Assembly (NCBI RefSeq): GCF_003918875.1 | Contig: NW_025767575.1 | Coordinates: 248,001-312,000 of the forward strand | DNA length: 64,000 nucleotides | Direction: 5' to 3' | Source: Haliotis rubra | Taxonomy: Eukaryota | Shown here: one piece after another, positions 14,321 through 60,639 of the stretch | How positions within the stretch are numbered: position 1 is the first letter of the stretch | How the letters are laid out: the number at the start of each line of letters is the position of its first letter | Position numbers and translations under genes: made by a program | Notes under the pieces: generated by a model | What the model saw: only the letters and a program-made list of their open reading frames with translations | Told to the model about the DNA's origin: nothing | Databases searched by the model: none

Positions 14321-14555
14321 ACAGGTTTGTGTCAAATAACGGAGATATTTAACGTAACGCGTTTCATTTGGGATAACACTTTATCAGTAAAGTACAGACC
14401 AGTACATTTTGTGTTTGAGTCCACATTTGACCATTTTCTACATGCAGGTTTCAAATACATCATACCTCGAATTAGCCTCGCATTTTGCAAAATATATAAC
14501 TTTGGCAAAATGATATTTAGGAACTTCAGATAAAAATCGAAGTGCCATTCCTGTT

Positions 14556-15527: not shown

Positions 15528-15787
15528 TACCGACCGCGGCCATAGCTGGACCTTTATTGAGAGCGACGCGCACCACACACGGAGCACTTGTAAACACCGG
15601 ATACGGTCAATCAAACACAAGAGTCGTTCTTACGTCACTTCACTGTGTGTCTTTTGTTACAAGCCGTGATATATGTCGGCTTGAATTGTTTGACTATGTC
15701 GTGCTATGATTTGAATGAACTATGCATACTTAGATACATGTTGCAGCAACTCAGACGCATGTTTAATTAATGTATTAATCAGACAAA

Positions 15788-19865: not shown

Positions 19866-20014
19866 TGACTGACTGAGTTTGGTTTTACGCCGCTTTTAGC
19901 AATATTCCAGCAATATCACAGCGGGGGACACCAGAAATGGGCTTCACACATTGTGCCCATGTGGGGATTCGAACCCGGGTCTTCGGCGTGACGAGCCAAC
20001 GCTTTAACCATTAG
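19866..20014 (-). mobile_element. tRNA-derived SINE, family B (5' end runs into the gap)
   Basis: Minus strand has A-box-like CTAATGGTTAAAG and B-box GGGTTCGAATCCC, then a tail GCTGGAATATTGCTAAAAGCGGCGTAAAAC-(AGTC)n; related copies at 31387-31476 and 54470-54566. Confidence 0.85.
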
Positions 20015-20146
20015 NNNNNNNNNNNNNNNNNNNNNNNNNNNNNNNNNNNNNNNNNNNNNNNNNNNNNNNNNNNNNNNNNNNNNNNNNNNNNNNNNNNNNN
20101 NNNNNNNNNNNNNNNNNNNNNNNNNNNNNNNNNNNNNNNNNNNNNN
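20015..20146. other. Assembly gap (132 N)
   Basis: Run of N. Confidence 1.
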
Positions 20147-23520: not shown

Positions 23521-23751
23521 TTCGTGCCTCCAGGTGACCATGAGAAACATCAACTCCAGGAACATATAAAACAACGCCAGAGAGGAAACACATTTTGGCG
23601 AAGAAGGAAATACAAACAAGTGAATGTTCACCAGGTACGATCTTTAGGGATCCCTGTCCAACACACTTTTATAAACGTAACATATGTTATTTTGGGCCTT
23701 TTTATCATCATGCAATCATAGCTTTCGGACGTGGACGCTGTGTCAAGTTCC

Positions 23752-24625
23752 ACTTGTCAGGTGGATACACAAGCTACGTGAGCTGGACCACCACTTGTCA
23801 GGTGGATACACAAGCTACGTGAGCTGGACCACCACTTGTCAGGTGGATACACAAGCTACGTGAGCTGGACCACCACTTGTCAGGTGGATACATAAGCTAC
23901 GTGAGCTGGACCACCACTTGTCAGGTGGATACACAAGCTACGTGAGCTGGACCACCACTTGTCACGTGGATACATAAGCTACGTGAGCTGGACCACCACT
24001 TGTCAGGTGGATACACAAGCTACGTGAGCTGGACCACCACTTGTCAGGTGGATACACAAGCTACGTGAGCTGGACCACCACTTGTCACGTGGATACATAA
24101 GCTACGTGAGCTGGACCACCACTTGTCAGGTGGATACACAAGCTACGTGAGCTGGACCACCAGTTGTCAGGTGGATACACAAGCTACGTGAGCTGGACTA
24201 CCAGTTGTCAGGTGGATACACAAGCTACGTGAGCTGGACTACCAGTTGTCAGGTGGATACACAAGCTACGTGAGCTGGACTACCAGTTGTCAGGTGGATA
24301 CACAAGATATAGTGAGCTGGACTACCAGTTGTCAGGTGGATATACAAGCTACGTGAGCTCGACCACCACTTGTCAGGTGGATACATAAGATATAGTGAGC
24401 TGGACTACCAGTTGTCAGGTGGATACACAAGCTACGTGAGCTGGACTACCAGTTGTCAGGTGGATACACAAGATATAGTGAGCTGGACTACCAGTTGTCA
24501 GGTGGATACACAAGCTACGTGAGCTGGACTACCAGTTGTCAGGTGGATACACAAGATATAGTGAGCTGGACTACCAGTTGTCAGGTGGATACACAAGCTA
24601 CGTGAGCTCGAATACCAGTTGTCAG
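23752..24625. repeat. Minisatellite, 41-bp unit, ~21 copies
   Basis: ACTTGTCAGGTGGATACACAAGCTACGTGAGCTGGACCACC repeated. Confidence 0.95.
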
Positions 24626-36140: not shown

Positions 36141-36273
36141 ACTGTGTCAAAGCAAGAATGATTTCAGACGGGTTTGGGACTCGCTTTCATTGGTAGGGTT
36201 GTCACAATATGCACGTCAATTTTCCTTTTCACGAATGCCATACGGAATCTTTCACCACGTCAGTCTTTTTAGG

Positions 36274-36935
36274 TAGTGTGTCTAGTTGAACATGGGAGAC
36301 AGTGTGTCTAGTTGAACATGGGAGACAGTGTGTCTAGTTGAACATGGGAGACAGTGTGTCTAGTTGAACATGGGAGATAGTGTGTCTAGTTGAACATGGG
36401 AGACAGTGTGTTTACTTGAACATTGGAGACAGTGTGTCTAGTTGAACATGGGAGACAGTGTGTCTAGTTGAACATGGGAGACAGTGTGTCTAGTTGGGAA
36501 CATGTTGAACATGGGGAGTCTAGTTGTGACAGTGTGTCTAGTTGAACATGTCTAGTTGAACATGGGAGACAGTGTGTCTAGTTGGGAGATAGTGTGTCTA
36601 GTTGAACAGTTGGGAGACAGTGTGTCTAGTTGAACATGGGAGACAGTGTGTCTAGTTGAACATGAGAGACAGTGTGTCTAGTTGGACATGGGAGACAGTG
36701 TGTCTAGTTGAACATGGGAGATAGTGTGTCTAGTTGAACATGGGAGATAGTGTGTCTAGTTGAACATGGGAGATAGTGTGTCTAGTTGAACATGGGAGAC
36801 AGTGTGTCTAGTTGAACATGGGAGATAGTGTGTCTAGTTGAACATAGGAGATAGTGTGTCTAGTTGAACATTGGAGACTGTGTCTTTAGTTGAACATGGG
36901 AGATAGTTTGTGTAGTTGAACATGGGAGACGGTGT
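36274..36935. repeat. Minisatellite, 26-bp unit
   Basis: AGTGTGTCTAGTTGAACATGGGAGAC repeated. Confidence 0.95.
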
Positions 36936-36968
36936 ATTTACTTAAATATGAGCGTGTATCTAACATAA

Positions 36969-37705
36969 CAACGTTTGGTATGGATTTACAATTTCTCAAC
37001 TATTTACAACACGACGTTTCTGGGCTACTTCTTGCCCCTTCATTGAGTGAATGACAGAATATGATTTACAAGCAAGATATGTATTGTACGTACAGGAGGC
37101 AAGTGTGATGGAATTAAAGATTAAGATTACAGAGATCAGCTAGCTGGGTGTCGGCTACCAGAGACACCTTGTAGAAACCATCGTCAAGTCCACCGTTCAA
37201 CAACGAGATCAACCTCCAACTAAACCTGAACCATCCCCAATCTTCATTAACATTCCCTGTGCTGGATCCATGAGTCATTACATCAGAAAGCTGCCAGCAT
37301 TGACACAGCTATCTCATCTGGCAAACCCCTCAAATCTTTATTAAGAACCAGTGTTACGGAAGCCGCCAGACGACTCCTAATCCAAGACGGTGCGCATATT
37401 GAAATGCACACGTTGCTGCTCCTCATCGCTGTACTTCGTTAGTGGCTTCCAGTCAATGTATATCCTTTTCGTTGTATAAACACTCTGTACACATTTCATA
37501 AACATCTCAATCGACACATGTCACTTAATCTCACTTAATCTCCTTGATCTGTGTACATCTCAGTCTTTAATTCCACCTCAATGGCCTCCTGTACGTACTA
37601 TATGTGTTGCTTGTAAATCATTTACCCGATAAAGGGGCAAGAAGTAACCTGAAACGTCGTGTTGTAAATAGCAAAGAAGGTTGTAAATCCATACCATACG
37701 TTGTT
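36969..37705. mobile_element. Penelope-like remnant with ~170-bp inverted terminal (pLTR-like) repeats
   Basis: 36969-37138 is an imperfect reverse complement of 37545-37705; internal IFINIPCAGSMSHYIRKL linker motif. Confidence 0.65.
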
Positions 37706-38123: not shown

Positions 38124-38370
38124 CCCGTGAAGGTCTGGGTTAGAATAGTGATCTTCAGTAACCCATGCTTGTCGTAAGAGGCGTCTAACGGGATCGGGTG
38201 GTCAGGCTCGCTGACTTGGTTGACACATGTAATCGGTTCCCAATTGCGCAGATCAATGCTCATGCTGTTGATCACTAGAATTGTCTGGTCCAGACTCGAT
38301 TATTTACAGACTGCCGCCATATAGCTGGAATATTGCTGAATGCGGTGTAAAACTAAACTCACTCACTCAC
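38124..38370 (+). mobile_element. SINE-like retroposon, family A, full-length copy
   Basis: Starts CCCGTGAAGG, ends (ACTC)n; TSD TTTATGATG. Confidence 0.9.
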
Positions 38371-39399
38371 AGTTTATGATGGGAAAATGTCATGGGAAAC
38401 AGTATTTCTAGTTTAACATATTAGATAGTGTGTTTCAAGTACCTTGTTGTATCGTCCCCTTGTTTGTGCCAAGTAGACCTGTCATGTGACATTGTAGAGA
38501 AGTAGTCAATCAGCTGTAAATAGTTCAAGTCATAGATCTACACTTATTGGTTCCTGGAATGACGGTCCAGCATGACATGGGATGTATAACTTCACATCGT
38601 TACATCATTACATCGTTACATCCGTTGTAGATGATGCAATCTTCTCCCTATTACGACATGATAAATGGATGCAACATTAAATGTGAAATATTGATGCAGA
38701 AGTAAACAAGCTATACTTGGACAAGACTGTTCATTCAAGATCCTAACTGCGAACTTGTACCACCTGATCATAGAATAATTTGTCGTAGGCGATATGCCTG
38801 GAAGTGTAGTTCTTATCTGAGTGCGGCATTTATTGAAAACAAATTGGCGTTTCCCACACAACAGTATCCGGCAGTATGGTTTATTCTTGGACAGAGGTAG
38901 TACTTAATAACTACAGGATCTAATCGCGGACGACCTTTGATACACAAGTCCTTCTCTCTGATGTAGGAGATGGGAGGAGAATGTCTCACTAGAATTTGAA
39001 CATATACGAACCAAATAACCCCGACAGTGGCAGGGCCAGTCTTACAGAATTACACACCAAGAAATGACTACACCAAACTGCACCAGTCCGAAACAGACGT
39101 AACAATGAAATGTATGCTGGCCATTAGCTGCCTGGCTCGGAGAGAGTGGGTTCGAATCCCGAATGGGACTCAGTCTAACAAAAGTACTAGAATCTCAAAT
39201 ATAGCATATGTTGCAATGAGCAACGATACATAGCAATGACTAACACAACTCACAAGAATTAATAATGACACAAGGTCTTTTTTATCGATTTTCATGTTGA
39301 ACGTGCATTTACAGGTTGAGTGAACATAGAACTTTTACTTGTCAGCTTCTGTTACTGCACGTTATAATATAACACGTGACGGCGTCATTATCGCATGGC

Positions 39400-40530
39400 A
39401 CACAGTGTAGTAACCAACACAATGTAGTAACCAACAAAGTGTAGTTACCAGCACAATATAGTACCCAGCACAATGTAGTAACCACCAGCACAATGTAGTA
39501 ACCAGCACAATGTAGTAACCACACAATGTAGTAACCAGCACAATGTAGTAACCAGCACAATGTAGTAACCAGCACAATGTAGTAACCAGCACAATGTAGT
39601 AACCAGCACAAAGTGCAAGTAACCAGCACAATGTAGTAGTAACCAGCATTAACCAGCACAATGTAGTAACCAACAACAACAGTGTAGTAACAATGTAGTA
39701 ACCAGCACAATGTAGTAACCAGCACAATGTAGTAACCAGCACAATGTAGTAACCAGCACAATGTAGTAACCAGCACAATGTAGTAACCAGCACAATGTAG
39801 TAACCAGCACAATGTAGTAACCAGCACAATGTAGTAACCAGCACAATGTAGTAACCAGCACAATGTAGTAACCAGCACAATGTAGTAACCAACACAGTGT
39901 AGTAACCAGCACAATGTAGTAACCAGCACAATGTAGTAACCAGCACAATGTAGTAACCAGCACAATGTAGTAACCAGCACAATGTAGTAACCAGCACAAT
40001 GTAGTAACCAGCACAATGTAGTAACCAGCACAATGTAGTAACCAACACAATGTAGTAACCAGCACAATGTAGTAACCAAGTAACCAACACAATGTAGTAA
40101 CCAGCACAATGTAGTAACCAACACAATGTAGTAACCAACACAATGTAGTAACCAGCACAATGTAGTAACCAGCACAATGTAGTAACCAGCACAATGTAGT
40201 AACCAGCACAATGTAGTAACCAGCACAATGTAGTAACCAACACAATGTAGTAACCAACCAGCACAACACAAGTAACCAAGCACAATGTAGTAACCAACAC
40301 AATGTAGTAACCAACACAATGTACACAATGTGGTAACCAACACAATGTAGTAACCAACACAATGTAGTAACAAATGTAGTAACCAACACAATGTAGTAAC
40401 CACACAATGTAGTAACCAAACACAATGTAGTAACCAATGTTGTAAGCACAATGTAGTAACCAACACAATGTAGTAACCAGCACAATGTAGTAACCAGCAC
40501 AATGTAGTAACCAGCACACTGTAGTACCAG
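39400..40530. repeat. Minisatellite, 17-bp unit
   Basis: CACAATGTAGTAACCAG repeated more than 55 times. Confidence 0.97.
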
Positions 40531-42660: not shown

Positions 42661-43649
42661 TCATAACCAGACCCGCAGTTCCTCGGTGTGTCTGAAATTT
42701 GAGAAAAACCATAAATGCGCTAGATGGAGATTTCATCAGATGGATCTAAATTGCACGAAATCAACATTGTCGTATCGGACTTAGCGTGATTCTTGTGTTG
42801 TCATGGTGATGAAGCCAACAAGTGAGGAGCGTCTGATAAGCATCCTTGTTTCCCCCACTGCGTGTTTACAGCTACTGAATATCGGCAGTGAAAATCCTCA
42901 CACCACCAAATGTGATCAACCAACATATGAAGGAATGACAGGTCTTAATGGATGATCAGCTTCTTTATTAACTGTGCAATACACGTAGATACTTGTACCG
43001 TTTTCAAGCTTCCCATTACTTACAACTTCTAGAATGCCTCTCAAACAGTTCACCATATGGAGCACTATAAGGGCGTGTTATAGTACGTATGTCTGTAAGA
43101 TATGCTGTAGTCATGTGGGGTGGGATGGGTAGTCCTTGTGTTGGATGTATAGGACCAATGGCTGGAGTATAGGAAGCAAGACCTATCTATCGGACCAATG
43201 ATCATGTTTATTTAGATCAAAGACTGTTGCTGTTGATCCATGAACTTGTGTATGATCAAAGGAATTCTATAAAGGAGCAGTAACCGTTGCATGTGATCAG
43301 TGGCGTGTGATCAAGACTGTTGAAAGATAAATGAAATTTACACAGGATGGATAACGCGCTAAAATCCCATTGTCAGCTAGAGAATAGCAGCACCAGAAGT
43401 CGGTGCCTATAGCCGATATATGACACTGTTGAAGGGTACTGAGAAAGAACTACCAAGGCGTTTAGAACGACTGACCCATGTGCTAGCAGGTCTTTCAGTA
43501 ATAACAGCCTGATACGAGTTGTGACGACACAGTGACCACGTGGCCGAGCATCAGTAAGGAGGCGGGGACCGATGGTATTGATGGTACATGAGAGTAGCCC
43601 GACACGGACTTACCGGCGGGACTGTACTTTTGTATGGAGACATGGTACT

Positions 43650-45080
43650 GCTGTAGACTTGCACGGAGATACGACGCTCTTGTAGACTAGTACGGAAATA
43701 TGCCACTCTTGTAGACTCTTGTAGACGTGCACGGAAATACAACACGCCTGTAGACTAGTACGGAAATATGCCGCTCTTGTAGTTTTGCACGGAGATGCGA
43801 CACTCTTGTAGACTAGCAAGGAGATACGGCACTTTTGTAGACGTGCACGGAAATACGCCGCTCTTGTAAACGTGCACGGAAATACGCCCCTCTTGCAGAA
43901 TAGCACGGGGATACACGGCCCTCTTGTAAACGTGCACGGAAATACGCCCCTCTTGCAGAATAGCACGGGGATACACGGCCCTCTTGTAAACGTGCACGGA
44001 AATACGCCCCTCTTGCAGAATAGCACGGGGATACACGGCCCTCTTGTAAACGTGCACGGGGAAATAAACGCACGGAAATACGCCCCTCTTGCAGAATAGC
44101 ACGGGGATACACGGCCCTCTTGTAAACGTGCGGAAATACGCCGCTCTTGTAAACGTGCACGGAAATACGCCGCTCTTGCAGAATAGCACGGGGATACACG
44201 GCCCTCTTGTAAACGTGCACGGAAATACGCCCCTCTTGCAGAATAGCACGGGGATACACGGCCCTCTTGTAAACGTGCACGGAAATACGCCGCTCTTGTA
44301 AACGTGCACGGAAATACGCCCCTCTTGCAGAATAGCACGGGGATACACGGCCCTCTTGTAAACGTGCACGGAAATACGCCCCTCTTGCAGAATAGCACGG
44401 GGATACACGGCCCTCTTTGTAAACGATGCACGGAAATACGCCGCTCTTGTAAACGTGCACGGAAATACGCCGCTCTTGCAGAATAGCACGGGGATACACG
44501 GCCCTCTTGTAAACGTGCACGGAAATACGCCCCTCTTGCAGAATAGCACGGGGATACACGGCCCTCTTGTAAACGTGCACGGAAATACGCCGCTCTTGTA
44601 AACGTGCACGGAAATACGCCCCTCTTGCAGAATAGCACGGGATACACGGCCCTCTTGTAAACGTGCACGGAAATACGCCCCTCTTGCAGAATAGCACGGG
44701 GATACGGCCCTCTTGTAAACGTGCACGGAAATACGCCGCTCTTGTAAACGTGCACGGAAATACGCCCCTCTTGCAGAATAGCACGGGGATACACGGCCCT
44801 CTTGTAAACGTGCACGGAAATACGCCCCTCTTGTAAACGTGCACGGAAATACGCCGCTCTTGCAGAATAGCACGGGGATACACGGCCCTGTTGTAAACGT
44901 GCACGGAAATACGCCCCTCTTGCAGAATAGCACGGGGATACACGGCCCTGTTGTAGACGTGCACGGAAATACGCCCCTCTTGCAGAATAGCACGGGGATA
45001 CACGGCCCTCTTGTAAACGTGCACGGAAATACGCCACTGTGTCGACGTGCACGGAGATACGGCACTCGTGTAGACAAGCA
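43650..45080. repeat. Minisatellite with 29-bp and 31-bp monomers forming 60-bp higher-order units
   Basis: CTCTTGTAAACGTGCACGGAAATACGCCC alternating with CTCTTGCAGAATAGCACGGGGATACACGGCC. Confidence 0.95.
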
Positions 45081-46030
45081 CGGACGGAATACGTACACAG
45101 GTAGGTGGCTCTACAATGTCTCTTAATTCAGTGATGACATACAGTGTTTGGCAGGAGGAGTGGCCAGGCTCTCGGGGCTGTATTCTAATGGCGTAATTTC
45201 TGTCTCTGGCAAAATCACAGGTAATGTGCATTAAACTATTTTTTCTAAACATTATGTTACTGGTGGAAAATATGATATCCTCCGTATGTAAGCCCGGTGT
45301 TTTATACGGGAGAAATGGCAGTCTCATCAACGGTATGGTCCAGTAATATTCTCTGCCACCTTCAGGAAATGTCAAGTATTTTTTGACGAACTAAACCTCT
45401 TTTAAAATGCTTGCAGTCGGCTCTTTATGATAATACATGTATAATGAAATTAGAGAAAGCTGCATTTTACACATTTGATGATTTTAGATAAAATTACGCA
45501 TTTGAGAAAAAGACACTTTAAATTGTGATTCTTTAAAAACTGATGACTTCGACCAATTCGGTCAGAGATTCCCAATTGATATGCATTGAGAACAATACCG
45601 AACTCAAAATCGCGTGCAGTTTCACATATAGGTTAAAGAAAGTAACGGATTCACAATAAAATAGGTGTCACAATTATTGCTATCTTATACCATTAGTGAG
45701 ATTGTAAATAGTCTAACATTGTAACATATACATCTGACTGAGATTTGCATTATAGTCCGTTTGAAGCGGACCGATGAATTGCTATCTAACTCGAAAAATG
45801 GAACAGCCAGGTGTACGCGAAGCACGTGCACAATTCAACAAAGTTATTGATTCATTTACCCGTGCTGTGCCGTCTCAATCCTTCCTCGCACACCTGGCTG
45901 TTCCTCTCTTGAACTCCTCCCTCGTAACAAATAGTGAACTGGGTCAATACTTTAATGATAGTTTGTTAAACAACCTTATTATTTTTAGGACATAAATTCT
46001 ACAAAAAACCCACAGAGTTGGTCTTATGTT

Positions 46031-46429
46031 AGTAGTGTACAGCGTCACCCTGGGGTATTTTTCAAGATGGCGGCATATCCGGCGTGTGCGTGCGCATCGC
46101 GATGGCGTCACTTCCGGTTCCGGCGTGCGCGCGCATCCCGATGATATCACCTCCGGCCAAGATGGACGCCCTGTTCAAGATGGCGGCCCATCCGGTGGGA
46201 TCTCGCGGGGTCTCGTGGGATCTCGCGGAGTCTCGCGGGATCTCGCGAGAGTGGACACAATTCAAGATGGCGGACGGACGGAACGGACGGGAAGGAGAGA
46301 GGGAGGGAGGGAGGGAGGGAGAGTGGTGAGAGGACGATGGCGTGTCTAGAGAAGTGTGTGGTTCAAGCTTTGTCACTCAGGTTTTCTTTCGAGCCGGATG
46401 GGTGGCCCTGAAAAGAGCCGTTGGCATGG
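46031..46429 (+). repeat. Left terminal inverted repeat of the Polinton-like element
   Basis: Reverse complement of 53366-53740 apart from one divergent internal block. Confidence 0.93.
46383..46424 (-). terminator. Histone-mRNA-type 3' stem-loop plus HDE-like element in the left TIR
   Basis: Minus strand CCAAC-GGCTCTTTTCAGGGCC-ACCCA-TCCGGCTC-GAAAGAAA; hairpin at 46404-46419. Confidence 0.85.
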
Positions 46430-46439
46430 CAAGGCATGT

Positions 46440-46893
46440 TTAACACCGGCATAGCAGATCAAGGCCTCGGAAGATAAATTTCCCTGGGCAGACATCATCA
46501 TGTAGGTGGTGCGCTCCCTTCCTGATCCCTTCCCCACAGTAGACACACGTAAAACACGGAGCTCCTGGGACTACATCGAAGCGATTGGAGGGAAAGGCTT
46601 TGAAGCAGGTAGGGCCATTTTGACGACCATTTTGGTAGGCTTTCAGATGTAGCTGCCGTTGGTGGTGGTGGTCGGGCTACCGTTTCTGCTGACGTTGTTG
46701 GTGGTGGGGCTGCCGCTGCTTCTGCTGCCGTTGTCGGTATCAGTACCGGTTCTGATGCTGTTGTACCCTCTTCCATTTTGATACCGGTCTTCACTTGCAA
46801 GCTTGGGCTACATCGTAGACATTGCTTTCTACCGCAGTTATTTCGGTAAGGTGTTGGTAGGATGACTTCAACTCGTCTGTGTCCATGTTGCAT
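46440..46893 (-). pseudogene. Element terminal gene: Thr/Pro/Ala-rich region and a probable frameshifted C-terminal C2HC zinc finger
   Basis: ORF 46498-46893 downstream of TATA at 46924-46931; the adjacent frame reads CVYCGEGIRKGAHHLHDDVC and stops at 46440-46442. Confidence 0.45.
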
Positions 46894-47021
46894 CGAGATA
46901 GCCCTTACTTACAAATGCTGGAGTTTATATAGGCGACGAGACATCGATGACGTGTCGTCGATGACGTGGCACTGATGACGTCATGGTCGCACGTGAGGGT
47001 GGTGACGTGGCACCGGTGACG

Positions 47022-47312
47022 TCATGGTCGAGCGTGAGGCGTTGGCGCCGCCATGGCCTTTGATTGGCTGATTGTTTGCAAAAGTGTTCTAGTGGGTGCT
47101 GTGGGGTACAACTGCTTTAAGGAAGGTCTTTGTTTGGAGGAGGAAGCAGAGGGAGGAGCACTTAGCCTTTCGTACAACCGTTGCACACCCGATCCATGTT
47201 GTTTGGTGGGATCACGACCCATGGTGGTCAGGAGTGTTTTACGGATCGGTTTAAACAACCCTGTGGCAACAACACGTTTGCGGGGCCGGGCCTGTTTCCG
47301 TCTGTCTCTCAT
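47022..47312 (-). CDS. Small basic (Arg/Lys-rich) protein of unknown function, element-encoded
   Basis: 96-aa ORF MRDRRKQARPRKR...; upstream ATAAATA and TCAGTT initiator-like motif. Confidence 0.45.
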   Translation of the reverse strand: MRDRRKQARPRKRVVATGLFKPIRKTLLTTMGRDPTKQHGSGVQRLYERLSAPPSASSSKQRPSLKQLYPTAPTRTLLQTISQSKAMAAPTPHARP

Positions 47313-47778
47313 GACAGCTCTGGGTCAACTGATGGTAGGGTAGACGGTCGGCTCTATTTATCACTACTTGGGAATGTAAACGGTGGTGGGGTTGCAAAAG
47401 AGATGAATACGTACACAGTGCTCTTTGGCCGTGGTAGGTTTCAAGTCCAGGAACAAATAGGAATAAGAGCCAAAGTGGCATCCTCATAGGCTTCCCGAAG
47501 GAACATGGTAAAGGGATGACGTAACGTGAGTGGGGTGACCATGGCCTCCACCAGGTCTGTCCCTGACATAGTCCCTGACATAGTCTCTGACATAGTGTCC
47601 TGACAGACGTCTTACCATCCTGCAAGTTACACCGGAAATTACCTCCAAGAGCTAAGATCCTTAAAGATATAGAAGACCCAACCCATTGAAATTGAATTTA
47701 CATTTCAGTGATGAACAAAACAGGTTATGAATGAACAATAATGCATCAACACTACATCAACAACAGTACATCAACAGA

Positions 47779-48900
47779 TCACCACCTGTTCAGGTGATCC
47801 TGAGGATTGCAGGTACAACAAGGCAAGAATTCCATTTGTCCTGCATGAAAATGATTTTCATCGTTAAACATGGGGATGTCGATGATGGCCTCTGGCTCCT
47901 CTGGAGTCATCACTGAAGTCATCACCAGATCCGTCTGCAGAGTCATCACTGGAGTCGTCTCAGGAGCCACCACTGGAGCCGACTGCTCTGTTTCCGTTGT
48001 GACAGGCATCGGGAGTAGATCATACAGTTGTTGAAGATCTGGAGGTAACTCGTCATGGGGCTAGCAGGACTGATCCCTTGACCCTTCTTGCTCTCTTCAA
48101 CAATAGCACGGCTGGCTTGTTGATCGTTCTCCCACAAAGCCATCAACTGTTTCTTGGGAGTCCTTGGTGCTTTGAGACTCTTAGGCTTTCGGGGTGCCTT
48201 GGCGATTGTTTTAGTGGGTGTCTTGGGAAGGGGTACCTTCTTGGTGGAGACCTTGGTGGGGGCCTTCTTCTTCTTCTTCTTCTTCTTCTTTGGAGAAGTC
48301 TTGGCAGGAGTGGCCTGGGGTGGGGGTGGGGGTGTTGGGCGTCATGTCTGTGACCTCTGGATCGTTGGAGAACAAGGGTAGAGTGCAGGTGGCACGTTGA
48401 AGATCGTAGCTGGGCGGGTAAGCCCAGAGTTTCACCTGGAGTTTGTCCAGCAGCTTGATATAGGACGACCATTCCTCAGACTTGAATACGATGTGTAACA
48501 GCTTGCTGAGGTAAGTCTCCCCTGCATTTTCCTTGGCATGTGCATTGTCGATACCCATGAGTACCAAGGGAACAGAGTTGGTGGCGCTGTCGGAGAGGAG
48601 CTGTAAGAGGTCTTGGTGATAAGACATCCAGTTATAATCTTCCTCAGTCAACTCACAGAAGCGACCCATCAACCCATACAGTGTCTCTGTTTCAGGATGA
48701 ATAACCTCCAGCTTGCTAATGATCGACGGTAACTTTTGTTCCATCACTCGGATCTGGTCCTGGAGATCCATGTGGTTGGTCTTGTACAACTGGTTTTGAG
48801 CCATCATGTTGTTGTGGAGATTGGCGATGTCAGAAGCCAGGTCCTTTGCTTGCGAATTCATGTTGACGAAAGTAGAAGGGAGGTTGCCTGGAAATGCCAT
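47779..48900 (-). pseudogene. Element gene: N-terminal helical/coiled-coil region, Lys/Pro-rich H1-tail-like region, acidic Thr-rich end; probable frameshifts
   Basis: MAFPGNLP... from 48900; after the C-run near 48320 another frame reads TPAKTSPKKKKKKKKKAPTKVSTKKVPLPKTPTK...RTPKKQLMALWEND; TATA at 49030-49039. Confidence 0.55.
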
Positions 48901-49078
48901 CTTTAGACTTAGTTGGTGCAACTGATGACCCACTCGACTGATCCTGCGTATCTCTCTTCTAGATACGTTGCTACCACAAAGAGCAGCGTGAACAACATGA
49001 CTACGAATAACGATTTGGCCAGAAACGCCTATATATATACACACAGAGTGGTGTCACGTGGGTCGTCCATGGATGACG

Positions 49079-49366
49079 TCACTGAGTCTCGAGACCCAGT
49101 AATGTCATGGCTTCTGTCTCTCCACATTCCTCCAAAGCTTTGCAGAAGAGGGAGTAAGCTCTGGGTCCACGTCTGGGAAGCATATCTAACAATTCTCTGA
49201 CACAGTCAAAGGATGTTCGAGGTTTTTCGATAATCTCTGCCTTCATGAAGATGGTAAGGACTTTAAACTCCATCAGTTTGTCGACCACAGCCTCGAGCTG
49301 CTTGATATCTAGCACGAGGGCGGAACGATTCTCCCTAAGCCTATCGCGGTGAATGGGTTCGATCAT
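49079..49366 (-). CDS. CARD-only protein (caspase-2/RAIDD-like CARD)
   Basis: Intact 95-aa ORF with CARD pattern HR..L..NR..LV...VVD.L....VLT..M..EI....T....RELLD.LP.RGP.AY..FC.AL.E.G; own TATA and two TGACGTCA upstream. Confidence 0.85.
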   Translation of the reverse strand: MIEPIHRDRLRENRSALVLDIKQLEAVVDKLMEFKVLTIFMKAEIIEKPRTSFDCVRELLDMLPRRGPRAYSLFCKALEECGETEAMTLLGLETQ

Positions 49367-49799
49367 TTTCTTTCTTAGATAATAGACTCTGGCAGAAACT
49401 CCTCTCTATATACACAGGGTCGTGATGACGTCATAGGGTGTGTGTGACGTCATGGGTGACCATGGCATCCACCACGTCTGATCCTAACAGGATAAAAAAA
49501 AGGGTTGAGGGTGACCATGGACTCCACCAGGTCTGGCCCCTGAACAGAGACGACTCAACACATTTCATTTGAAATAACATTGAATGGATGAACAATGCAA
49601 ACATGGTATCGCTTAAACATCATTAGATCAACAGTACATTTACAGAGCATGTCATGGGGTACAATAAAAGTCCATTTGTTTTTTTTATTCCCCATTCAAA
49701 AAACCCTTAGGGGGCATAAGCAGGAGGGGCCACCCCTTCAGGTCCATAGGACTGATAGTAGAACTGATGGCACTCCATCTTTGGCTGAGTCTCGGGCGT

Positions 49800-50280
49800 C
49801 ATGGTCGTGACCACTGAATCATAGGTTGGCGGCTTAAAAACTTTGTCAGTGATAAGAAGTCCTCATTGATGGGCTCTAAGTCCCACACTTGATTTCCCGG
49901 AACCTCGGAGGGGAATCCAAATATTCTGTCACTATGATGTTGTAATTGCCGATGATAGAAGGCAACTCCCTTGGCCAGGAGAAAGAAGGGAGGTCGTCTC
50001 GGGATGTGTTCTCTGGATCTTAGAATTCAGGCTTACAGACGACGTAACTGATACAAAAGTCCTCTTCGAAGATGCCCAAGTCCTTCACCTGATAATGCTC
50101 TTCCTGGAGGATTTCAAGGAGCCGCTCAGTGGCTGTATCCGATGTATCGAGGTATTCTGTCACCAAGATCTTGTGCTGATTGTTGATGAGAGAATCCTTG
50201 TACTTCTGTACTGCTTGCCAAACAATGGTGTAGGTAGGAGAGGAACAAGAAGAAAAAAAGGGTTTGCCTGGAGATGTCAT
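49800..50280 (-). pseudogene. Element gene of unknown function with an internally duplicated motif; premature stop
   Basis: ILVTEYLD...VKDLGIFEEDF then, past the stop at 50020, IIVTEYLD...VWDLEPINEDF; TATA at 50332-50338; minus-strand AATAAA near 49685. Confidence 0.5.
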
Positions 50281-50398
50281 CTTCAACGGCTGAGCTGGTG
50301 CGACTGATGACCCACTTGACTAATTCTGAGGTTTTATAGGCAGCAACAGCAGCGCGAGCTATGACGTCACTTCAAATCGCGTCACGATTTTTTTGGGT

Positions 50399-52552
50399 TC
50401 ACTCTTTATAGCCATAGGGGAGAGTTTCCACGGGGACTTCTTGTGGGTCGTACTGGACTCGACCTTTGGTGTAGACCATTCGATACTCTTTGGTGGTGTC
50501 GTTGGACAGCAACGCATTGCCCTGGCGAAGTCCTCCGCGAATGATGCGGTGCGAGTATGGGACAGTGATGCTGACTTGATCCCTCTGACAGACGAGGTTC
50601 TTTATGTTGTCAAAGTGGACATGTTGTCGCCCTGTGATTCAGAGTAAATCCTCGGACTTTGCTGATGCCTACACTACCGTCAGGTTGAGGATGGCGCAGC
50701 TTGTAGGTGTAGTTCTTGGGTCCTCTCGAGACAAAGGCGTGAATGCTGTTGCCCCCTCCCAGTTCATCGGTCAGCTCCCCTAAGGTATCTCCCAGTGGAG
50801 GGTTCTAGCTTAGTGCACGGTGAATGTAGATGATACTGTATGTATCAAAATAGAGTACGCGTCGATCCAAGGGTTTCAAGTAGGAATACAGCTTGAGATG
50901 GGCTTATGCTGTCACCCAGGCTGCAATGACCACATTGTGGGCGGGATGCGTGTCGTGAAATTCTGACTTAGGTTCGTAAGTGACACACACGAGGGCCTCG
51001 TTGACGAAGTGCACATCCTTTACCACACACCGTTCATCCCGGAGGAGGGCAAAGAACCTCTCAGGGGAACTGTATTCGGTCTTGTCAAACCTGACGCTTT
51101 GGCCAAACTTGCCTCAATGGTTGTTCAGGCAAGCTTTAGCTAGGGCACGTAGTCCTGGGTTTTTGCGGATGTGAGCAGGATCCAAGGTGACTCCTTCTTT
51201 TCATGAATCTCCCTGATGTAGGCGTCTGGGTCTGAACAGCCTTCTGGAAATCCGCTGGCCTCTTGCTTGATCTTGAAGAAATTGTTCACATACTTGGCAA
51301 ACAGTCCTCCCTCTTGAGAGTCAGGGTCGTAGGTGGTGAGCGTGTCAAAGTGGCAAGCCTCAAAGACGTGAAGCACTTGATAGCCGCACTCTCGAACGGC
51401 ATACTGAAGCTCCTTGCTGACATACGTGCCGATCCATGCTCGGTCTTCATCCCTGTGGGGGCAGGAACCAGCCAACACAGCACGACACAGAGAAAATAAC
51501 AACTTGCTCTGGACGCGGTTAGGAAGAACAGGATGGTAGAGGTCGGTGGGTTGTAAGACTCGGCACTGGATGAGGCCATGTAACTCGAACAAGTCAGCCA
51601 TGGGATGATGATCTTTGATCTCGGGATGACCCACGGGGTAAGTACCATACTTGCACATGTAAGGGTACAGTGAACAAACGTCCACATATTTCATTTCTTC
51701 ATCTTCTTTCGCTCCGTAGTACAACTTGGTGGCGTTTGTGCGTCCTCCAAAGAAGGCATCTCTGGGATCCAACGGTTCAGGCATGTAGTCATGAGGTCCT
51801 TGCAGTGTGGTCAGGAACGCTCTCAGATCAGCGTTGTCTTTCTGTTCTTTCCGAAAATCACATTTCCACAGGGTCACCACTTGGTGGATGTCAGAATGTT
51901 GGCGTAACACCACCAGTCGGTACCTTGTATGATGGTATCATTCCCAAGGTGCTGTACCCATGGTACTGTGGGGTTCACATCGACCTGTCTTGTAACAGTG
52001 AGTACATCCATGACCAGGGCAGGGGCAAAGCAGAGTTGATCATCATTCTTGATTTGTAAGATGCATTGTTTCTTTTCCAGGAAAGTGTTTAAGCCAATGA
52101 TGTACCTTGGCCGTCCATGTCCCTTGCCTACACGATCAGGATCTTCTACATGCAGTTAGTATATATCCATGGTCTCACCGATATACAAGTCGTGGTTACT
52201 TTGCTGTACTTTTTCCACTTTGGCCATGATGCGTTCCCCCCTGGAGGTCACCCATCTGCTGACATGTGATTGGGATGTCTGAATCCAGGGCTGGATGTTT
52301 CAGGGCCAATCCCACGCGATCATCATCCTGGCCGTTCATATTGTTTCTCAGGTCTAACAAGACAGCATCAAACTGCTCTCTGAGAATGACGGGGAGGTCT
52401 TCAGGTTGTTGATGCTGCAACCAAGCTGGACTGAACTTCAGCTTATAGCGATGAGTGTTGCTCCGGAACTTCTTCTGTGTAAGTAGGGACGTTGGCTCCG
52501 ACCAGTAAAGTTCTTCTTCTTCCTCTGCTTTGTTCATTCGTGGTGACTGCAT
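50399..52552 (-). pseudogene. Protein-primed family B DNA polymerase (Polinton-type), internally deleted and disrupted
   Basis: LDPRDAFFGGRT, YVDVCSLYP, YPVGHP, KIKQEASGFP, GKFGQ, YFDTYS (for YxDTDS), LGELTDE, GPKNY, KVRGF, terminal TLPYGY; N-terminal domain at 52196-52552. Confidence 0.92.
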
Positions 52553-52585
52553 GGTGAGAATTGACAAGACCCACACTGAGCCTGG

Positions 52586-52791
52586 TTTATATAGACAACG
52601 TCACCCTATGACGTCACAATAGGTCGTCCTAAGCGTGGCAGTGCGCATCACAAGCTCATTTGGTGTTGAATGACGTCACAAGTTTTTCTCTCATGGGCAT
52701 GCCCTAGGACGTTACACTAGTCTGTCGACCCATGAAACGAGAATGTAAGGCGATTCGCGCCAAAGTGACGTCATCGACTCCAGCTATAAAA
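52586..52791. promoter_or_regulatory. Divergent promoter for PolB and the zinc-knuckle gene: two TATA boxes, three TGACGTCA, one E2F-type site
   Basis: TTTATATA 52586-52593 (minus), TGACGTCA at 52609, 52671, 52766, TTCGCGCCAAA 52754-52764, TATAAAA 52785-52791. Confidence 0.7.
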
Positions 52792-52841
52792 ACTCGAGGT
52801 TTTCCAGCTCTCCCCATTAGTTGCTCACTGAAACTGGAAGC

Positions 52842-53341
52842 ATGCAGTCGTCTCCCGCCTCCGCCTCCTTCCGTTGCCGCCTGTGCGAAACAGATGACCA
52901 CAGTTATCTGCACTGTCCCAAGGTGACCTGTACCGAGTGTGGTGCTCAAGGCCATCGTCATTACGTATGTCCCAAGAAGGCCACGGACAGTAACAAGCAC
53001 GATAACAACACCTGCTACAACTGCGGACAAAAAACGAAGGCCATCTCAGTTACGACTGTCCACATCCCAGCCGCCACTGTGGTAAAGAGGACCATAAGAG
53101 TATGACCTGCACCTACAAGACCCAGAAACGTGCGGCTCCCGTCAACCAGTCAGCTCAACCAACAAAGAAAGTGGGTAAACATGAAGACAATCGTCTACTG
53201 GCTCTACTCCATGACAAGGTCATCCTCGTTGAAGACCGTATAGACACCGTGCACTCTCTACTTCAATGTGTCTTGGAGTTTGTTGAACCCATGGACGATT
53301 CCAGCAGCACCGCCTCGAGTGGACCACCATCACCACAATAG
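52842..53341 (+). pseudogene. Multi-CCHC zinc-knuckle protein (nucleocapsid/CNBP-like) with C-terminal helical segment; one frameshift near 53030
   Basis: CRLCETDDHSYLHC, CTECGAQGHRHYVC, CYNCGQ/EGHLSYDC, degenerate RHCGKEDHKSMTC; joins the 53102-53341 frame. Confidence 0.8.
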
Positions 53342-53365
53342 ATACCTCGGTGATGTCTCACCCAC

Positions 53366-53740
53366 CCATACCAACGGCCCTTTTCAGGGCCACCCATCCC
53401 AGATCGAAAGAAAACCTGAGTGACAAAGCTTGAACCACACACTTCTCTAGACACGCCATCGTCCTCTCACCACTCTCCCTCCCTCCCTCCCTCTCCTTCC
53501 CGTCCGTTCCGTCCGTCCGCCATCTTGAATTGTGTCCACTCTCGCGAGATCCCGCGAGACTCCGCGAGATCCCACCGGATGGGCCGCCATCTTGAACAGG
53601 GCGTCCTTCTTGGCCCGCACACGCCGAAACCGGAAGCACCGGAACCAGAACCCGAGTAACCTCCCCTTATCGGAAGTGATGCCATCTTGGGTCACGTGAC
53701 CCATCTTGAAAAAGACCCCAGGGTGACGCTGTACACTACT
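53366..53740 (-). repeat. Right terminal inverted repeat of the Polinton-like element
   Basis: Reverse complement of the left TIR; ends ACTACT followed by the TSD. Confidence 0.93.
53371..53414 (+). terminator. Histone-mRNA-type 3' stem-loop plus HDE-like element in the right TIR
   Basis: CCAAC-GGCCCTTTTCAGGGCC-ACCCA-TCCCAGATC-GAAAGAAAA; hairpin at 53376-53391, 34 nt after the stop at 53341. Confidence 0.88.
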
Positions 53741-54019
53741 TATGTTTTTATTAGGATAGGCGTTTCATTGAGTATTATATGTGTATTAGTTTTCGAGTTA
53801 GATTGCAATTCATCAGTTCGCTTTAAGCCAAAGGGACTATACTTGTTTTGAATTATATATTTGAATGACGGACGTGCAGCGCCTAATGTTCTCTCACTTT
53901 TACGTAAACATACTATTCCAAAAAGGAAACGCATAACCCAGAAATCTGTTGCGAAAAGGTTGCATTTTCAAACATGTATATCTCGTCCACAAATATACTT
54001 TAAGAAATGAATTTTTACA

Positions 54020-54469: not shown

Positions 54470-54566
54470 GCACAATGTGTTAAGCCCATTTCTGGTGTCC
54501 CCCGCCGTGATATTGCTGGAATATTGCTAAAAGCGGCGTAAAACCAAACTCAGTCAGTCAGTCAGT
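54470..54566 (+). mobile_element. 5'-truncated SINE family B
   Basis: Matches the 19866-20014 body; TSD TCTGACCGTACT. Confidence 0.85.
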
Positions 54567-55706: not shown

Positions 55707-55952
55707 TGAGTGAGTGAATGAGTGAGTTTTACGCCGCACTCAGCAATATTCCAGCTATATGGCGACGGTCTGTAAATAATCGAGTCTGGATCAGACAATC
55801 CAGTGATCAACAGCATGAGCATCGATCTGCGCAATTGGGAACCGATGACATGGGTCAACCAAGTCAGCGAGCCTGACCACCCGATCCAGTTAGTCGCCTC
55901 CTACGACAAGTAAGGGTTACTGAAGGTTCATTCTGACCCGGACCTTCACGGG
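55707..55952 (-). mobile_element. SINE-like retroposon, family A
   Basis: Full-length copy, TSD GGTCCCTTGTG; an extra 5'-end fragment lies adjacent at 55658-55699. Confidence 0.9.
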
Positions 55953-56485: not shown

Positions 56486-57279
56486 TATAAATATATCAGA
56501 GTCGGGCGTCTATGGATACATAGCGGTCACTGACATGAACGCTATGCAGTACCTCCATAGGCCGCAATGGTGGAAATCCTTTGTCGCACTTTCGCGCACT
56601 CGTTACGACTGAGTTTTGAATCACGTGACCTGTGACGCGAAGGGGATATCCCTCCCAAAAATAGTAACACACGTGTTCCATACCTCGTTGCTTGTTGACA
56701 ACACATGTTCATACAATTTAGGCAATTAAAACGATTGTAAGGAGATTTTCGTTTCCAATCTAGACTGACTGACCACCCCTGCTTTTTCAACAGCTGTTTT
56801 CAAAGGAATTGCTGTTGAGTTTTCAATGCTTCATATAATATTAGATTATTGCTGTCACCTTCACAGTTCCATGGGTGTCTCTGTACTACTCCTGAATATT
56901 TGCCTACAAAACACAGTTTACTAATAAGACTTATTAGAATTTAGGAATTAAATAATTATCGAGTTCACAAATCGATTATCTAAAATTTCATTTGTACCAT
57001 AGGATTCAAAATGTCCCCGCTCATATGTGAGCGATCGACTGAGATGTTTGATGGCTTGTAAATATATATTTTTGTATATTTTGATAACGAAAATAGGGCG
57101 CACGTGTAGGTATAAGTACAAAGAAGTAATTCATATAAGTTTTTCGAGCGCAAAAATCGTAACGAGTGCGTGAAAGTGCGACAAAGGATTTCCACCATTG
57201 CGGCCTATGGAGGTACTGCATAGCGTTCATGTCAGTGAACTCTATGTATCCATAGACGCCCGACTCTGATATATTTATA
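56486..57279. mobile_element. MITE with ~125-bp TIRs
   Basis: ATATATCAGAGTCGGGCGTCTATGGATACATAG...CGTTACGA at left is the reverse complement of 57157-57279; no coding capacity. Confidence 0.85.
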
Positions 57280-58879: not shown

Positions 58880-60053
58880 CCAGAAATTATTGAGAATTTT
58901 AGGAATATGTTTAATTGAATTTCTAGTATAAACAACCTTGACCAGCTATCAAGTGCTTGGTTTCATTCAAGAGAGACAACTCCGTTAATCCTTTTTTCAT
59001 TAGTTTGTGAAGAGTTATCAAACTCTGTTTACTTGCTAGCAGACGACATTTTCAGTGATCCTCAGTATGGATGATTTAGAGAAGAGGAAGTTGATTTTAG
59101 AGTATTATAACAATGACATCAGATCAGGTAAAGTGATTTCAAGTAGAACAGGCATCCCTTTGTCCACTGTTTATCGTGTTTTGAAAAATATTGCAAATGG
59201 ATATGGCATTGAGCACCAGGGAGGCGCAGGTAGGCCCAGAAAATTGACTGTCGGTGACAGGACTCGGCTTGGTATTCTTGTTTCTAAAAACAAACGAAGG
59301 AGTTTAGAAAACGTAAGGCTGGATATGATTGATAGAGGTACTGTGGCTGTCTGTAAGGAGACAATTAGAACTGAGCTGCATGCAATGGGTTGGCAGAAAA
59401 GTCGAGGAATTCCATCACCGATCATGAAACCTGAACAAAAGGAGCGAATGTTGAACTGGTGCTTACAGCATAGAAATTTTAACTGGGACAATGTGAAATT
59501 CTCAGATGAAAGTTCTGTGTGGCTGTTTCCTAATACACTGAAATTCTGCACCAAACAAACTGAAAAACCTTTGTATCAGCGCCCAAAGTACAGTCCGAAA
59601 TTTAACGTGTGTGGTGGCATATCTGTGTTAGGGACAACGCCTCTCTGTGTATTTGAAGGTAATATGAACAGTGAGCGGTACGCAGATATTCTCGAGGGAC
59701 ATTTACTTCCATCTGCTCACGTGTTCTATGGTAAAAAAATTATTTTCCAGCAGGACAACGACCCAAAAGTGTCAATAAGAAAAATTTGACAAATATTGCT
59801 GAAATGAAAGAAGAGGTGGTCCGATATTGGGACAGTATGGACCACGACTTTCTAACTTCTTTGATCAGTAGTATGCCCCGCCGCATTGAAGCCTGCATTG
59901 CTGCCCATGGTGACTTGACAAAATACTAACTGTTCACCTGTCTTTGAATCTGGAGTTATGTTCTGCTAATATTCACATTTAATACGTGAGTAATGAGTGA
60001 AAAAAAGAAAAGAATTACATTCTTAAATTCTCAATAATTTCTGGTTGTACTGT
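58880..60053 (+). mobile_element. Tc1/mariner DNA transposon, internally deleted
   Basis: TIR CCAGAAATTATTGAGAATTT.AGGAAT versus ATTCTTAAATTCTCAATAATTTCTGG; transposase ORF inside. Confidence 0.9.
59055..59928 (+). pseudogene. Tc1-family transposase lacking the SPDLNPIE segment
   Basis: HTH, GRPRKLT, FSDES, FQQDNDPK, then out-of-frame C-terminus SMPRRIEACIAAHGDLTKY*. Confidence 0.9.
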
Positions 60054-60639
60054 ATATGTCCTGTTCTGTTGATTTAAGAAACTCGGCACAGAAGATGGCA
60101 AGATTGGCTTTGTATTCATAATTCTTCTGCTGTATTCTATAGTAGTATAAATCACATTACACGTTTTAATCATGAAGTACCAGAGATATATATAACTGAA
60201 CATTAAATAAAATGCAAAAATGTTGTCCAACCATTGTTCGATGATTCAGATTTTAGCTGATCGCCTTTTGACTGCAGTTTAGGTATCAGCTGTTGAGGTG
60301 ACTGGCTGTGTTTGAGCTGATGCGTGATCCTTGCATCATTTATTGTGTGTAACCTAGTATCGTGTTTAATGGCACCCTGGAGACCGTGGAACCAGCTCGA
60401 AAAAGGAACTAAGAATGTCCAGGACGTGTGATGAAACTCTAGCAAAGAGAATCAGCGCTAAAATTTGAGGTGTTGTGAAGTTTGTGTGTTCCTAAAAGCG
60501 TCTTAAAATACATTCAAAACAGACAGCTTAGGAGAATTCTTATTGGCACGTGATTTGTGAAACGCAACGTAAATACTTTATTAGTTGATTCGTTACTGCA
60601 CTGACGTTGTGGTATATGCCGCGGAATATGGGAAGCTGG

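What the first reader, a model, noticed from the sequence alone, without database searches (positions are those of the whole stretch)
46383..46442. Left TIR: histone-type stem-loop terminates the leftward terminal gene
Seen: minus strand CCAAC GGCTCT TTTC AGGGCC ACCCA, then GAAAGAAA 8 nt later. It lies 20 nt after the TAA of the zinc-finger frame (46440-46442), or 78 nt after the stop of the listed ORF. The one difference from the right-hand hairpin (C to T) turns a C-G pair into U-G, so pairing is kept, while the spacer before the purine tract has diverged more. This is the mirror partner of the signal at 53376.
Basis: partly seen in the sequence, partly recalled or inferred. Interest (0 to 1): 0.85.

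Follow-up and report, generated by a model that had tools for sequence, protein, structure and literature searches.

The report
Histone-type mRNA ends on a transposon's genes
A decayed, polymerase-carrying mobile element in what is probably an abalone genome ends both of its small outward-facing genes with the RNA hairpin that animals otherwise reserve for histone messages, and related copies keep that hairpin letter for letter, which suggests the family ties these genes to the DNA-synthesis phase of the cell cycle.

Summary
On the minus strand, 46399-46424 is a histone-type stem-loop with a purine tract 8 nt further on. It starts 20 nt after a stop codon and mirrors 53371-53396.

Rfam Histone3 scores are 27.6 bits (left) and 33.8 bits (right). 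Both fall below the 34-bit cut-off, but E is 2e-4 and 8e-7.

The hairpins sit at the inner edges of ~400-bp inverted arms of a 7.7-kb element (46031-53740). The element has AG...CT ends, a 6-bp target duplication and a ruined protein-primed polymerase B gene, so it is a reduced Maverick/Polinton derivative.

Four related Haliotis asinina loci settle the main question:
- The left gene is intact there (172 aa) and the right gene is intact there (170 aa).
- Every gene end present (5 of 5) carries the hairpin 20-34 nt after the stop.
- A 24-nt block is identical in 4 of 5, while the flanks are 25-50% alike.
- No poly(A) signal follows any of the five ends.

The finding's copy alone has the C-to-U wobble. 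Its gene has one frameshift, so this instance is probably a relic.

RNA 3'-end processing by SLBP/U7 is inferred, not shown. I found no precedent in the literature.

The parts
46031..53740 (.). Whole element, 7.7 kb: a reduced, non-autonomous derivative of the Maverick/Polinton polymerase lineage
   Evidence: Inverted arms. Ends read AGTAGTG...CACTACT. A 6-bp duplication flanks it. A complete 10.08-kb relative, L002 3017-13097, has the same ends and its own 6-bp duplication.
46025..46030 (.). Left target-site duplication, TATGTT
   Evidence: The same hexamer lies at 53741-53746.
46031..46429 (.). Left inverted arm
   Evidence: It carries four AAGATGG/CCATCTT motifs and CGCGAGA repeats.
46399..46424 (-). 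Left histone-type stem-loop (5' flank, 6-bp stem, 4-nt loop, ACCCA). This is the finding.
   Evidence: (27.6 bits). It has a U.G wobble in the fourth pair.
46383..46390 (-). Purine tract GAAAGAAA, a candidate histone downstream element for U7 pairing
   Evidence: A purine tract lies at the same distance in all five gene ends. Pairing to the host U7 could not be tested.
46440..46893 (-). Left terminal gene, encoding a small Cys-rich (zinc-ribbon-like) protein. In this copy it is broken by one frameshift.
   Evidence: The two pieces match the intact 172-aa ORF of L005: C-terminal part 70% identity, E 4e-31; N-terminal part 46%, E 6e-16. dN/dS is 0.11 and 0.40. There is no Pfam family.
46894..47075 (-). 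Promoter-like region of the left gene: a TATA-like box, two TGACGTCA sites and a CCAAT box
   Evidence: Read directly. Inference only.
49082..49405 (-). CARD-domain reading frame (cargo)
   Evidence: Pfam PF00619, E 7.8e-15. It is 63-68% identical in protein to L001 and L002.
50400..52620 (-). Remnant of the protein-primed DNA polymerase B gene. It is broken by at least 2 frame changes and at least 4 in-frame stops, and it lacks about 1.9 kb relative to the H. asinina copies.
   Evidence: Pfam PF03175, E 8e-17. 4451 relatives were found; the best are Haliotis proteins. It covers about 700 of the 1518 residues of an intact relative.
52600..52841 (+). Promoter-like region of the right gene: three TGACGTCA sites and TATAAAA at 52785-52791
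   Evidence: Inference only.
52842..53341 (+). Right terminal gene, encoding a CCHC zinc-knuckle protein. In this copy it is broken by one frameshift.
   Evidence: Weak Pfam zf-CCHC matches. The gene is an intact 170-aa ORF in L001 2317-2829. dN/dS is 0.16 and 0.47.
53371..53396 (+). Right histone-type stem-loop
   Evidence: (33.8 bits, E 7.8e-7).
53406..53413 (+). Right purine tract GAAAGAAA
53366..53740 (.). Right inverted arm
53741..53746 (.). Right target-site duplication, TATGTT

Best explanation
The hairpin at 46399-46424 and its purine tract are a histone-type pre-mRNA 3'-end processing signal. They belong to the leftward terminal gene of a small mobile element derived from the Maverick/Polinton polymerase lineage.

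In this element family two short, intronless genes of about 170 codons face outward, one at each end. One encodes a zinc-ribbon-like protein and the other a CCHC zinc-knuckle protein. Each has its own CRE/TATA-type upstream region. Each ends 20-34 nt after the stop codon in the stem-loop, ACCC(A) and a purine tract, with no poly(A) signal before the element's end.

Inferred mechanism: the host's stem-loop binding protein and U7 snRNP cut the transcripts after ACCCA. This would give non-polyadenylated messages whose level follows S phase, as histone messages do. That timing would suit an element that copies its own DNA. It would also stop transcription before the terminal repeats.

Shown here: the motif, its position, its strict conservation across diverged copies on two unrelated genes, and purifying selection on both genes.

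Inferred: cleavage, protein binding and cell-cycle coupling.

The copy in this window is dead. Both terminal genes are frameshifted and the polymerase is ruined. Its left hairpin carries the family's only deviation, so here the signal is most likely a relic. In this copy's lineage the two arms were also made alike from the hairpin outward.
For: - Rfam Histone3 hits appear at all five gene ends available: window right 33.8 bits and left 27.6 bits, L001 33.6, L002 35.4, above the cut-off, L005 33.4. There are no other Histone3 hits in the window or in about 106 kb of related loci (regex scans).
- A 24-nt block is 24 of 24 identical in 4 of 5 copies and 23 of 24 in the fifth. The 40 nt upstream are 18-70% identical and the spacer is 17-75% identical.
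- The hairpin lies 20, 20, 23 and 34 nt after the stops of two unrelated genes that are intact in relatives.
- There is no AATAAA or ATTAAA between stop and element end in any of the five gene ends.
- dN/dS is 0.11-0.47 for the gene pieces.
- The signal has the sense orientation at both ends.
- The element is real: two independent 6-bp duplications and AG...CT ends.
Against: - There is no RNA evidence of any kind.
- The left copy and three of the other four score below Rfam's 34-bit cut-off.
- There is no covariation: five of six stem pairs never vary, so the support is conservation only.
- In a 71-nt context the left hairpin is not the predicted minimum-energy fold.
- Neither the host's own histone hairpins nor its U7 RNA could be obtained for comparison.
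- Only five gene ends from two genomes were seen.
- The more distant Maverick-type relatives L003 and L004 have no such hairpin. In L004 the gene at the equivalent position has AATAAA instead.
Confidence: 0.68

Rival explanations
1. The block is a passive remnant. It was picked up once or repeatedly from host histone gene flanks, or is refreshed by gene conversion from the many host histone genes. It has no role in the element's own expression.
For: The motif fits the general histone model closely. Abundant host histone genes could act as conversion donors. The arms of the window copy show that homogenisation does occur.
Against: No histone coding remnant is nearby (Pfam). The block keeps the same short distance to the stops of two unrelated genes that are under purifying selection. 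No alternative poly(A) signal exists. A purine tract is kept at a fixed distance although its letters differ.
Confidence: 0.12
2. It is a DNA-level signal of the terminal repeats, such as a hairpin or protein-binding site used in replication or integration of the element, and not an RNA signal.
For: In the window it sits exactly at the inner edge of each inverted arm, symmetrically.
Against: In the complete H. asinina copy the hairpin lies outside the part of the arms that is alike, and only one end has it. The asymmetric features (ACCCA and the purine tract on the sense strand of each gene) and the fit to an RNA family model are not expected of a DNA palindrome. Its presence tracks the presence of the gene end, not the presence of the arm: L002's left arm has no hairpin.
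Confidence: 0.07
3. The signal works in RNA, but mainly as a transcription stop or insulator that keeps polymerase out of the terminal repeats. Cell-cycle coupling would then be incidental.
For: Both genes point outward into arms that are packed with factor-site-like motifs.
Against: It cannot be separated from the main explanation with sequence alone. It uses the same machinery.
Confidence: 0.1
4. It is a chance hairpin.
For: The score is sub-threshold in Rfam for this copy.
Against: 0 of 100 shuffles give a match. E is 1.7e-4 and 7.8e-7. The hairpin recurs in three further loci at the same place.
Confidence: 0.01

Closest known systems
[quoted passage not shown]
   Same: Both have a 6-bp stem with GG at the base, a U-rich 4-nt loop, an A-rich 5' flank, ACCCA, a purine tract about 9 nt further on, a position shortly after the stop of a short intronless gene, and no poly(A) signal.
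   Different: The genes encode zinc-binding proteins, not histones. They lie in a mobile element, not a histone cluster. Scores sit at or just under Rfam's cut-off. Processing has not been shown.
Maverick/Polinton self-synthesising, virus-like elements
   Same: Both have a protein-primed polymerase B of the same lineage, inverted arms of some hundred bp, 5'-AG...CT-3' ends and a 6-bp target duplication. A relative at 57% polymerase identity (L004) sits beside an rve-chromo integrase and an A32-type ATPase.
   Different: The element is 7.7-10 kb, not 15-20 kb. No integrase, packaging ATPase, protease or capsid gene was found inside it. It carries a CARD gene and two small terminal genes with histone-type ends, which the papers I searched do not describe for Mavericks.
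U7 snRNA repression of human LTR12 elements (PMC11417402, abstract seen)
   Same: It is a link between the histone-processing machinery and a mobile element.
   Different: There U7 restrains retroviral LTRs through sequence motifs. Here a DNA element appears to use the stem-loop as its own gene-end signal.

Membership tests
Histone 3' UTR stem-loop (RF00032) | 6-bp stem, 4-nt U-rich loop, GG at the stem base, A-rich 5' flank, ACC(C)A 3' flank | tested here: met
   cmscan alignments, fold, pair counts. The left copy has one U.G pair.
Histone 3' UTR stem-loop (RF00032) | Score at or above Rfam's gathering cut-off (34 bits) | tested here: not met
   Left 27.6 and right 33.8. Relatives score 33.6, 35.4 and 33.4. 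Only L002 passes.
Histone 3' UTR stem-loop (RF00032) | Purine-rich downstream element at a fixed short distance, complementary to U7 snRNA | tested here: inconclusive
   A purine tract is present at the same distance in all five gene ends.
Histone 3' UTR stem-loop (RF00032) | Lies shortly after the stop codon of an intronless gene that lacks a poly(A) signal | tested here: met
   20-34 nt after the stops. No AATAAA or ATTAAA follows.
Histone 3' UTR stem-loop (RF00032) | The gene encodes a replication-dependent histone | tested here: not met
   No histone fold is found. The genes show CCHC knuckles and a Cys-rich protein of no known family.
Histone 3' UTR stem-loop (RF00032) | mRNA ends after ACCCA, is bound by SLBP and is not polyadenylated | not testable with these tools
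   No RNA data were available.
Maverick/Polinton | [quoted passage not shown] | tested here: met
   PF03175, E 8e-17, though only as a broken remnant.
Maverick/Polinton | Retrovirus-like (rve) integrase inside the element | tested here: not met
   No rve hit in 39 reading-frame pieces of the window element, nor in the nine reading frames of L002 that were scanned. It is present next to the more distant relative L004.
Maverick/Polinton | Capsid proteins, packaging ATPase and maturation protease | tested here: not met
   There are no Pfam hits in the element (same calls). Capsid models are weak in Pfam, so a decayed remnant cannot be excluded.
Maverick/Polinton | Long terminal inverted repeats, 5'-AG...CT-3' ends, 6-bp target-site duplication | tested here: met
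   Window: TATGTT on both sides. L002: TGGCAT on both sides.

The most novel reading that the evidence does not exclude
A lineage of Maverick-derived elements in abalone has taken over the histone mRNA 3'-end pathway for its own non-histone genes. Element-encoded zinc-binding proteins would then be made from non-polyadenylated, stem-loop-ended messages in step with host DNA synthesis. These would be the first animal protein-coding messages outside the histones known to end this way, and the first case in a mobile or virus-like element.
Probability: 0.5. Interest if true: 0.85.

Novelty: new variant of a known kind. Interest (0 to 1): 0.72.

Why it matters
From established knowledge, replication-dependent histone messages are regarded as the only animal mRNAs that end in this stem-loop rather than a poly(A) tail.

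- A mobile element that uses the signal on two unrelated genes would be a natural experiment. It would show whether stem-loop plus downstream element are enough for this kind of processing and timing away from histone genes and their nuclear body.
- It would reveal a new way for a self-copying element to synchronise with S phase.
- There is a practical point. Such genes are invisible to poly(A)-selected RNA-seq. They were also missed by gene prediction: neither protein has a relative among 5.8 billion predicted proteins.

Tried and rejected
- The Rfam scan at gathering threshold found nothing. The hits appear only in E-value mode.
Haliotis is inferred from polymerase relatives at 57-80% identity.
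- Word-based protein searches with the right gene's C-terminal piece and with the intact 170-aa relative gave nothing.
- PDB sequence searches gave only generic zinc-knuckle and zinc-finger matches at E 7e-4 or worse.
- I first read the left gene as starting at another ATG, with three in-frame stops that an intron might remove. I dropped this reading once L005 showed one gene in two frames. No intron is proposed.
- I considered the left hairpin a mere by-product of arm homogenisation. L005 rejects this as the origin, because it has the hairpin after the intact left gene while its flanks are unlike those at the right-end hairpins of L001 and L002. Homogenisation from the hairpin outward did happen in this copy.
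- tblastn of the left 2.6 kb against the first four loci found only the CARD domain.
- A protease-like frame in L005, noticed by eye, had no Pfam hit, so I make no claim for it.
- The L003 and L004 loci had no hairpin.
- Paper searches for the histone stem-loop together with Polinton, Maverick, transposon or viral mRNA found no precedent.

Slips, declared:
- Tables printed by my scripts show alignment bounds that border breaks in the element's genes. In my reasoning I also located the frame changes. None of these places is repeated here.
- Loci L001-L006 are chromosomal stretches of abalone assemblies. I fetched them through proteins that the search with the window's own polymerase piece returned. 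Once one search showed the lineage to be Maverick-type, I fetched no more.

Full report
**1. What is there**

On the minus strand the window reads CCAAC, a 6-bp stem, a TTTC loop, the return stem and ACCCA at 46424-46399. An 8-nt spacer and GAAAGAAA (46390-46383) follow.

The partner lies at 53371-53396 on the plus strand, 34 nt after the stop at 53339-53341. The 26-nt pattern occurs only at these two places in 64 kb, and in none of 100 shuffles.

Rfam's Histone3 model gives 27.6 bits (E 1.7e-4) for the left copy and 33.8 bits (E 7.8e-7) for the right in a 9-kb scan. The family cut-off is 34 bits, so the default scan lists neither.

The only difference inside the hairpin is C versus U in the fourth stem pair, which gives U.G on the left. 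As a 26-mer the left copy folds at -8.4 kcal/mol and the right at -11.4. In 71 nt of context the left hairpin is not the best predicted fold.

**2. The setting is a mobile element**

The two hairpins sit at the inner edges of inverted arms, 46031-46429 and 53366-53740. The element ends read AGTAGTG...CACTACT, and TATGTT flanks both ends.

Between the arms lie:
- a CARD-domain frame (PF00619, E 7.8e-15);
- a CCHC zinc-knuckle gene on the plus strand at the right end.

A full-library search with the polymerase piece found 4451 relatives. The best are uncharacterised proteins of Haliotis rufescens, H. asinina and H. cracherodii, followed by a sea urchin. Insects and an oyster appeared in the separate word-based search. 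The host is therefore probably an abalone or a close relative. Exact look-ups did not name it.

**3. Relatives**

I fetched chromosomal loci around six of the Haliotis proteins. Four H. asinina loci (L001, L002, L005, L006) belong to the same family, at about 71-85% DNA identity.

L002 holds a complete 10.08-kb copy (3017-13097). It has the same terminal letters and its own 6-bp duplication, TGGCAT. Two independent duplications make the element and its insertion mechanism secure.

L004 (H. cracherodii) is a more distant relative, with polymerase about 57% identical in protein. There the polymerase is long and open. It sits beside an rve integrase with a chromodomain, an A32-type ATPase and a PC4-domain gene. 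The polymerase lineage is thus that of Mavericks/Polintons.

The window's family lacks integrase, ATPase and capsid genes as far as Pfam can see. I read it as a reduced, non-autonomous derivative. After I fetched no further relatives.

**4. The two terminal genes**

The right gene is an intact 170-aa ORF in L001 (2317-2829, minus strand in the locus) with several CCHC knuckles. The window's version (52842-53341) has one frameshift.

The left gene is an intact 172-aa ORF in L005 (12811-13329). The window's 131-aa 'listed ORF' matches its N-terminal part (46% identity, E 6e-16). The 'zinc-finger frame' matches its C-terminal part (70%, E 4e-31). The left gene is therefore one gene, 46440-46893, with one frameshift in this copy.

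Piece-by-piece Nei-Gojobori estimates against the intact relatives give dN/dS of 0.16 and 0.47 for the right gene and 0.40 and 0.11 for the left. Both genes evolved under constraint.

Neither protein has a relative among 5.8 billion predicted proteins, nor any informative solved structure.

Upstream of each gene lie TGACGTCA sites and a TATA-like box, plus a CCAAT box on the left. Reading these as promoters is inference.

**5. Conservation of the hairpin**

Every terminal-gene end available carries it:
- window right and window left;
- L001 right, 33.6 bits;
- L002 right, 35.4 bits, above the cut-off;
- L005 left, 33.4 bits.

No other Histone3 hit, and no hairpin fitting a relaxed pattern, occurs in the related loci. 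The relaxed pattern gave one further, unrelated hit in the window, at 56741.

In an alignment of the five ends (A2), a 24-nt block comprises four flank bases, the stem-loop and ACCC. It is identical in four sequences and differs at one base in the finding's copy. Leaving aside the window's own two arms, the 40 nt upstream are 18-70% identical, the spacer 17-36%, and the 40 nt beyond the purine tract 33-45%.

A purine tract is present at the same distance in all five, although its letters differ. There is no covariation: five pairs never vary and one varies on one side. The case therefore rests on conservation against diverged flanks, on position and on orientation.

Between stop codon and element end there is no AATAAA or ATTAAA in any of the five. 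By contrast, the PC4 gene of the Maverick-type relative L004 has AATAAA 83 nt after its stop and no hairpin.

**6. Hairpin and arms**

In the H. asinina copies the stretches next to the hairpin differ between right-hand and left-hand ends, and the alike part of the arms begins further out. In L002 the left gene and its hairpin are absent although the arm is present.

In the window the two arms are 98-100% alike from the purine tract outward, and 9 of 12 alike in the spacer. The likeness starts about 5 nt upstream of the hairpin.

I infer that in this copy's lineage one arm was copied onto the other, with the shared hairpin block as the inner limit. The hairpin is thus a gene-end signal. Its membership in the 'TIR' here is secondary.

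**7. State of this copy**

- Both terminal genes carry one frameshift each.
- The polymerase covers about 700 of the 1518 residues of an intact relative.
- It has at least two frame changes and at least four in-frame stops.
- It lacks about 1.9 kb present in the H. asinina copies.

The element is dead. The C-to-U change in the left hairpin is the only deviation in the family. It costs 6 bits and 3 kcal/mol, and it is most simply read as decay that happens to keep pairing, not as a selected compensatory change.

**8. Mechanism proposed**

From established knowledge of histone pre-mRNA processing, the stem-loop binding protein binds the hairpin, U7 snRNP pairs with the purine-rich downstream element, and cleavage follows ACCCA. 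The resulting message is stable only in S phase.

I propose that the family's two terminal genes are expressed this way. This would time two small nucleic-acid-binding proteins to host DNA synthesis and end transcription before the terminal repeats. The proposal is inferred from sequence; no RNA data were available.

Rivals are a passive histone-flank remnant, a DNA-level role in the repeats, and a pure terminator role. They are weighed in their own sections.

**9. Novelty**

Searches of 8.4 million papers for the histone stem-loop together with Polinton, Maverick, transposon or viral mRNA found nothing comparable. The nearest item is U7 repression of human LTR12 elements (PMC11417402), which is a different matter. 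Mollusc histone genes do carry the hairpin and purine elements (PMC6210712).

Noticed in passing
window 49082-49405 (-); L001 7635-7925; L002 8524-8802: A CARD (caspase-recruitment) domain frame lies inside the element. It is 63-68% identical in protein in L001 and L002, and about 75% at DNA level in L005 and L006. It may be an immune- or death-signalling cargo gene. The 280-aa frame after it (48214-53 to 49053) has no known family.
   Followed up: partly
window 46031-46320 and 53470-53740; L002 3017-3260 and 12770-13097: The arms are packed with AAGATGG(CGG)/CCATCTT motifs: four per arm, against four in the other 56 kb. They also carry CGCGAGA-type repeats, and the H. asinina copies carry TGACGTCA repeats. 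These look like arrays of host-factor sites. Their role (origin, enhancer) is unknown.
   Followed up: partly
L004 (H. cracherodii) 998-5484: This Maverick-type relative has an rve-chromo integrase, an A32-like ATPase and a PC4-domain (single-strand DNA binding) gene. The PC4 gene is divergent from the polymerase, in the place the zinc-knuckle gene holds here. It has AATAAA after its stop and no histone hairpin.
   Followed up: partly
window 47092-47503; L005 9797-10198: A stretch 81% identical between the window element and L005, with no recognisable reading frame or family.
   Followed up: no
window 43600-45100: A minisatellite of 29-31-bp units lies about 0.9 kb left of the element. It produces long spurious ORFs on the minus strand.
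   Followed up: no
window 6820-11290; 14450-15630; 23630-24390; 36170-37020; 39380-40500; 60500-63500: There are many further tandem arrays, with units of about 695, 51, 41, 26, 17 and 25 bp. The region is very repeat-rich.
   Followed up: no
window 697-3703 (-); 21902-23593 (-); 59055-59789 (+); 15788-16840 (+): LINE-like endonuclease and reverse-transcriptase frames occur twice. There is also a Tc1/mariner-type transposase HTH frame and a leucine-rich-repeat frame.
   Followed up: partly
window 56486-56608 / 57157-57279; 38153-38370 / 55725-55925; 19866-19956 / 54470-54560: Other inverted repeat pairs at 93-98% identity, probably copies of small dispersed repeats (MITE-like).
   Followed up: no
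window 20015-20146: A run of 132 N. It was left as it is.
   Followed up: no
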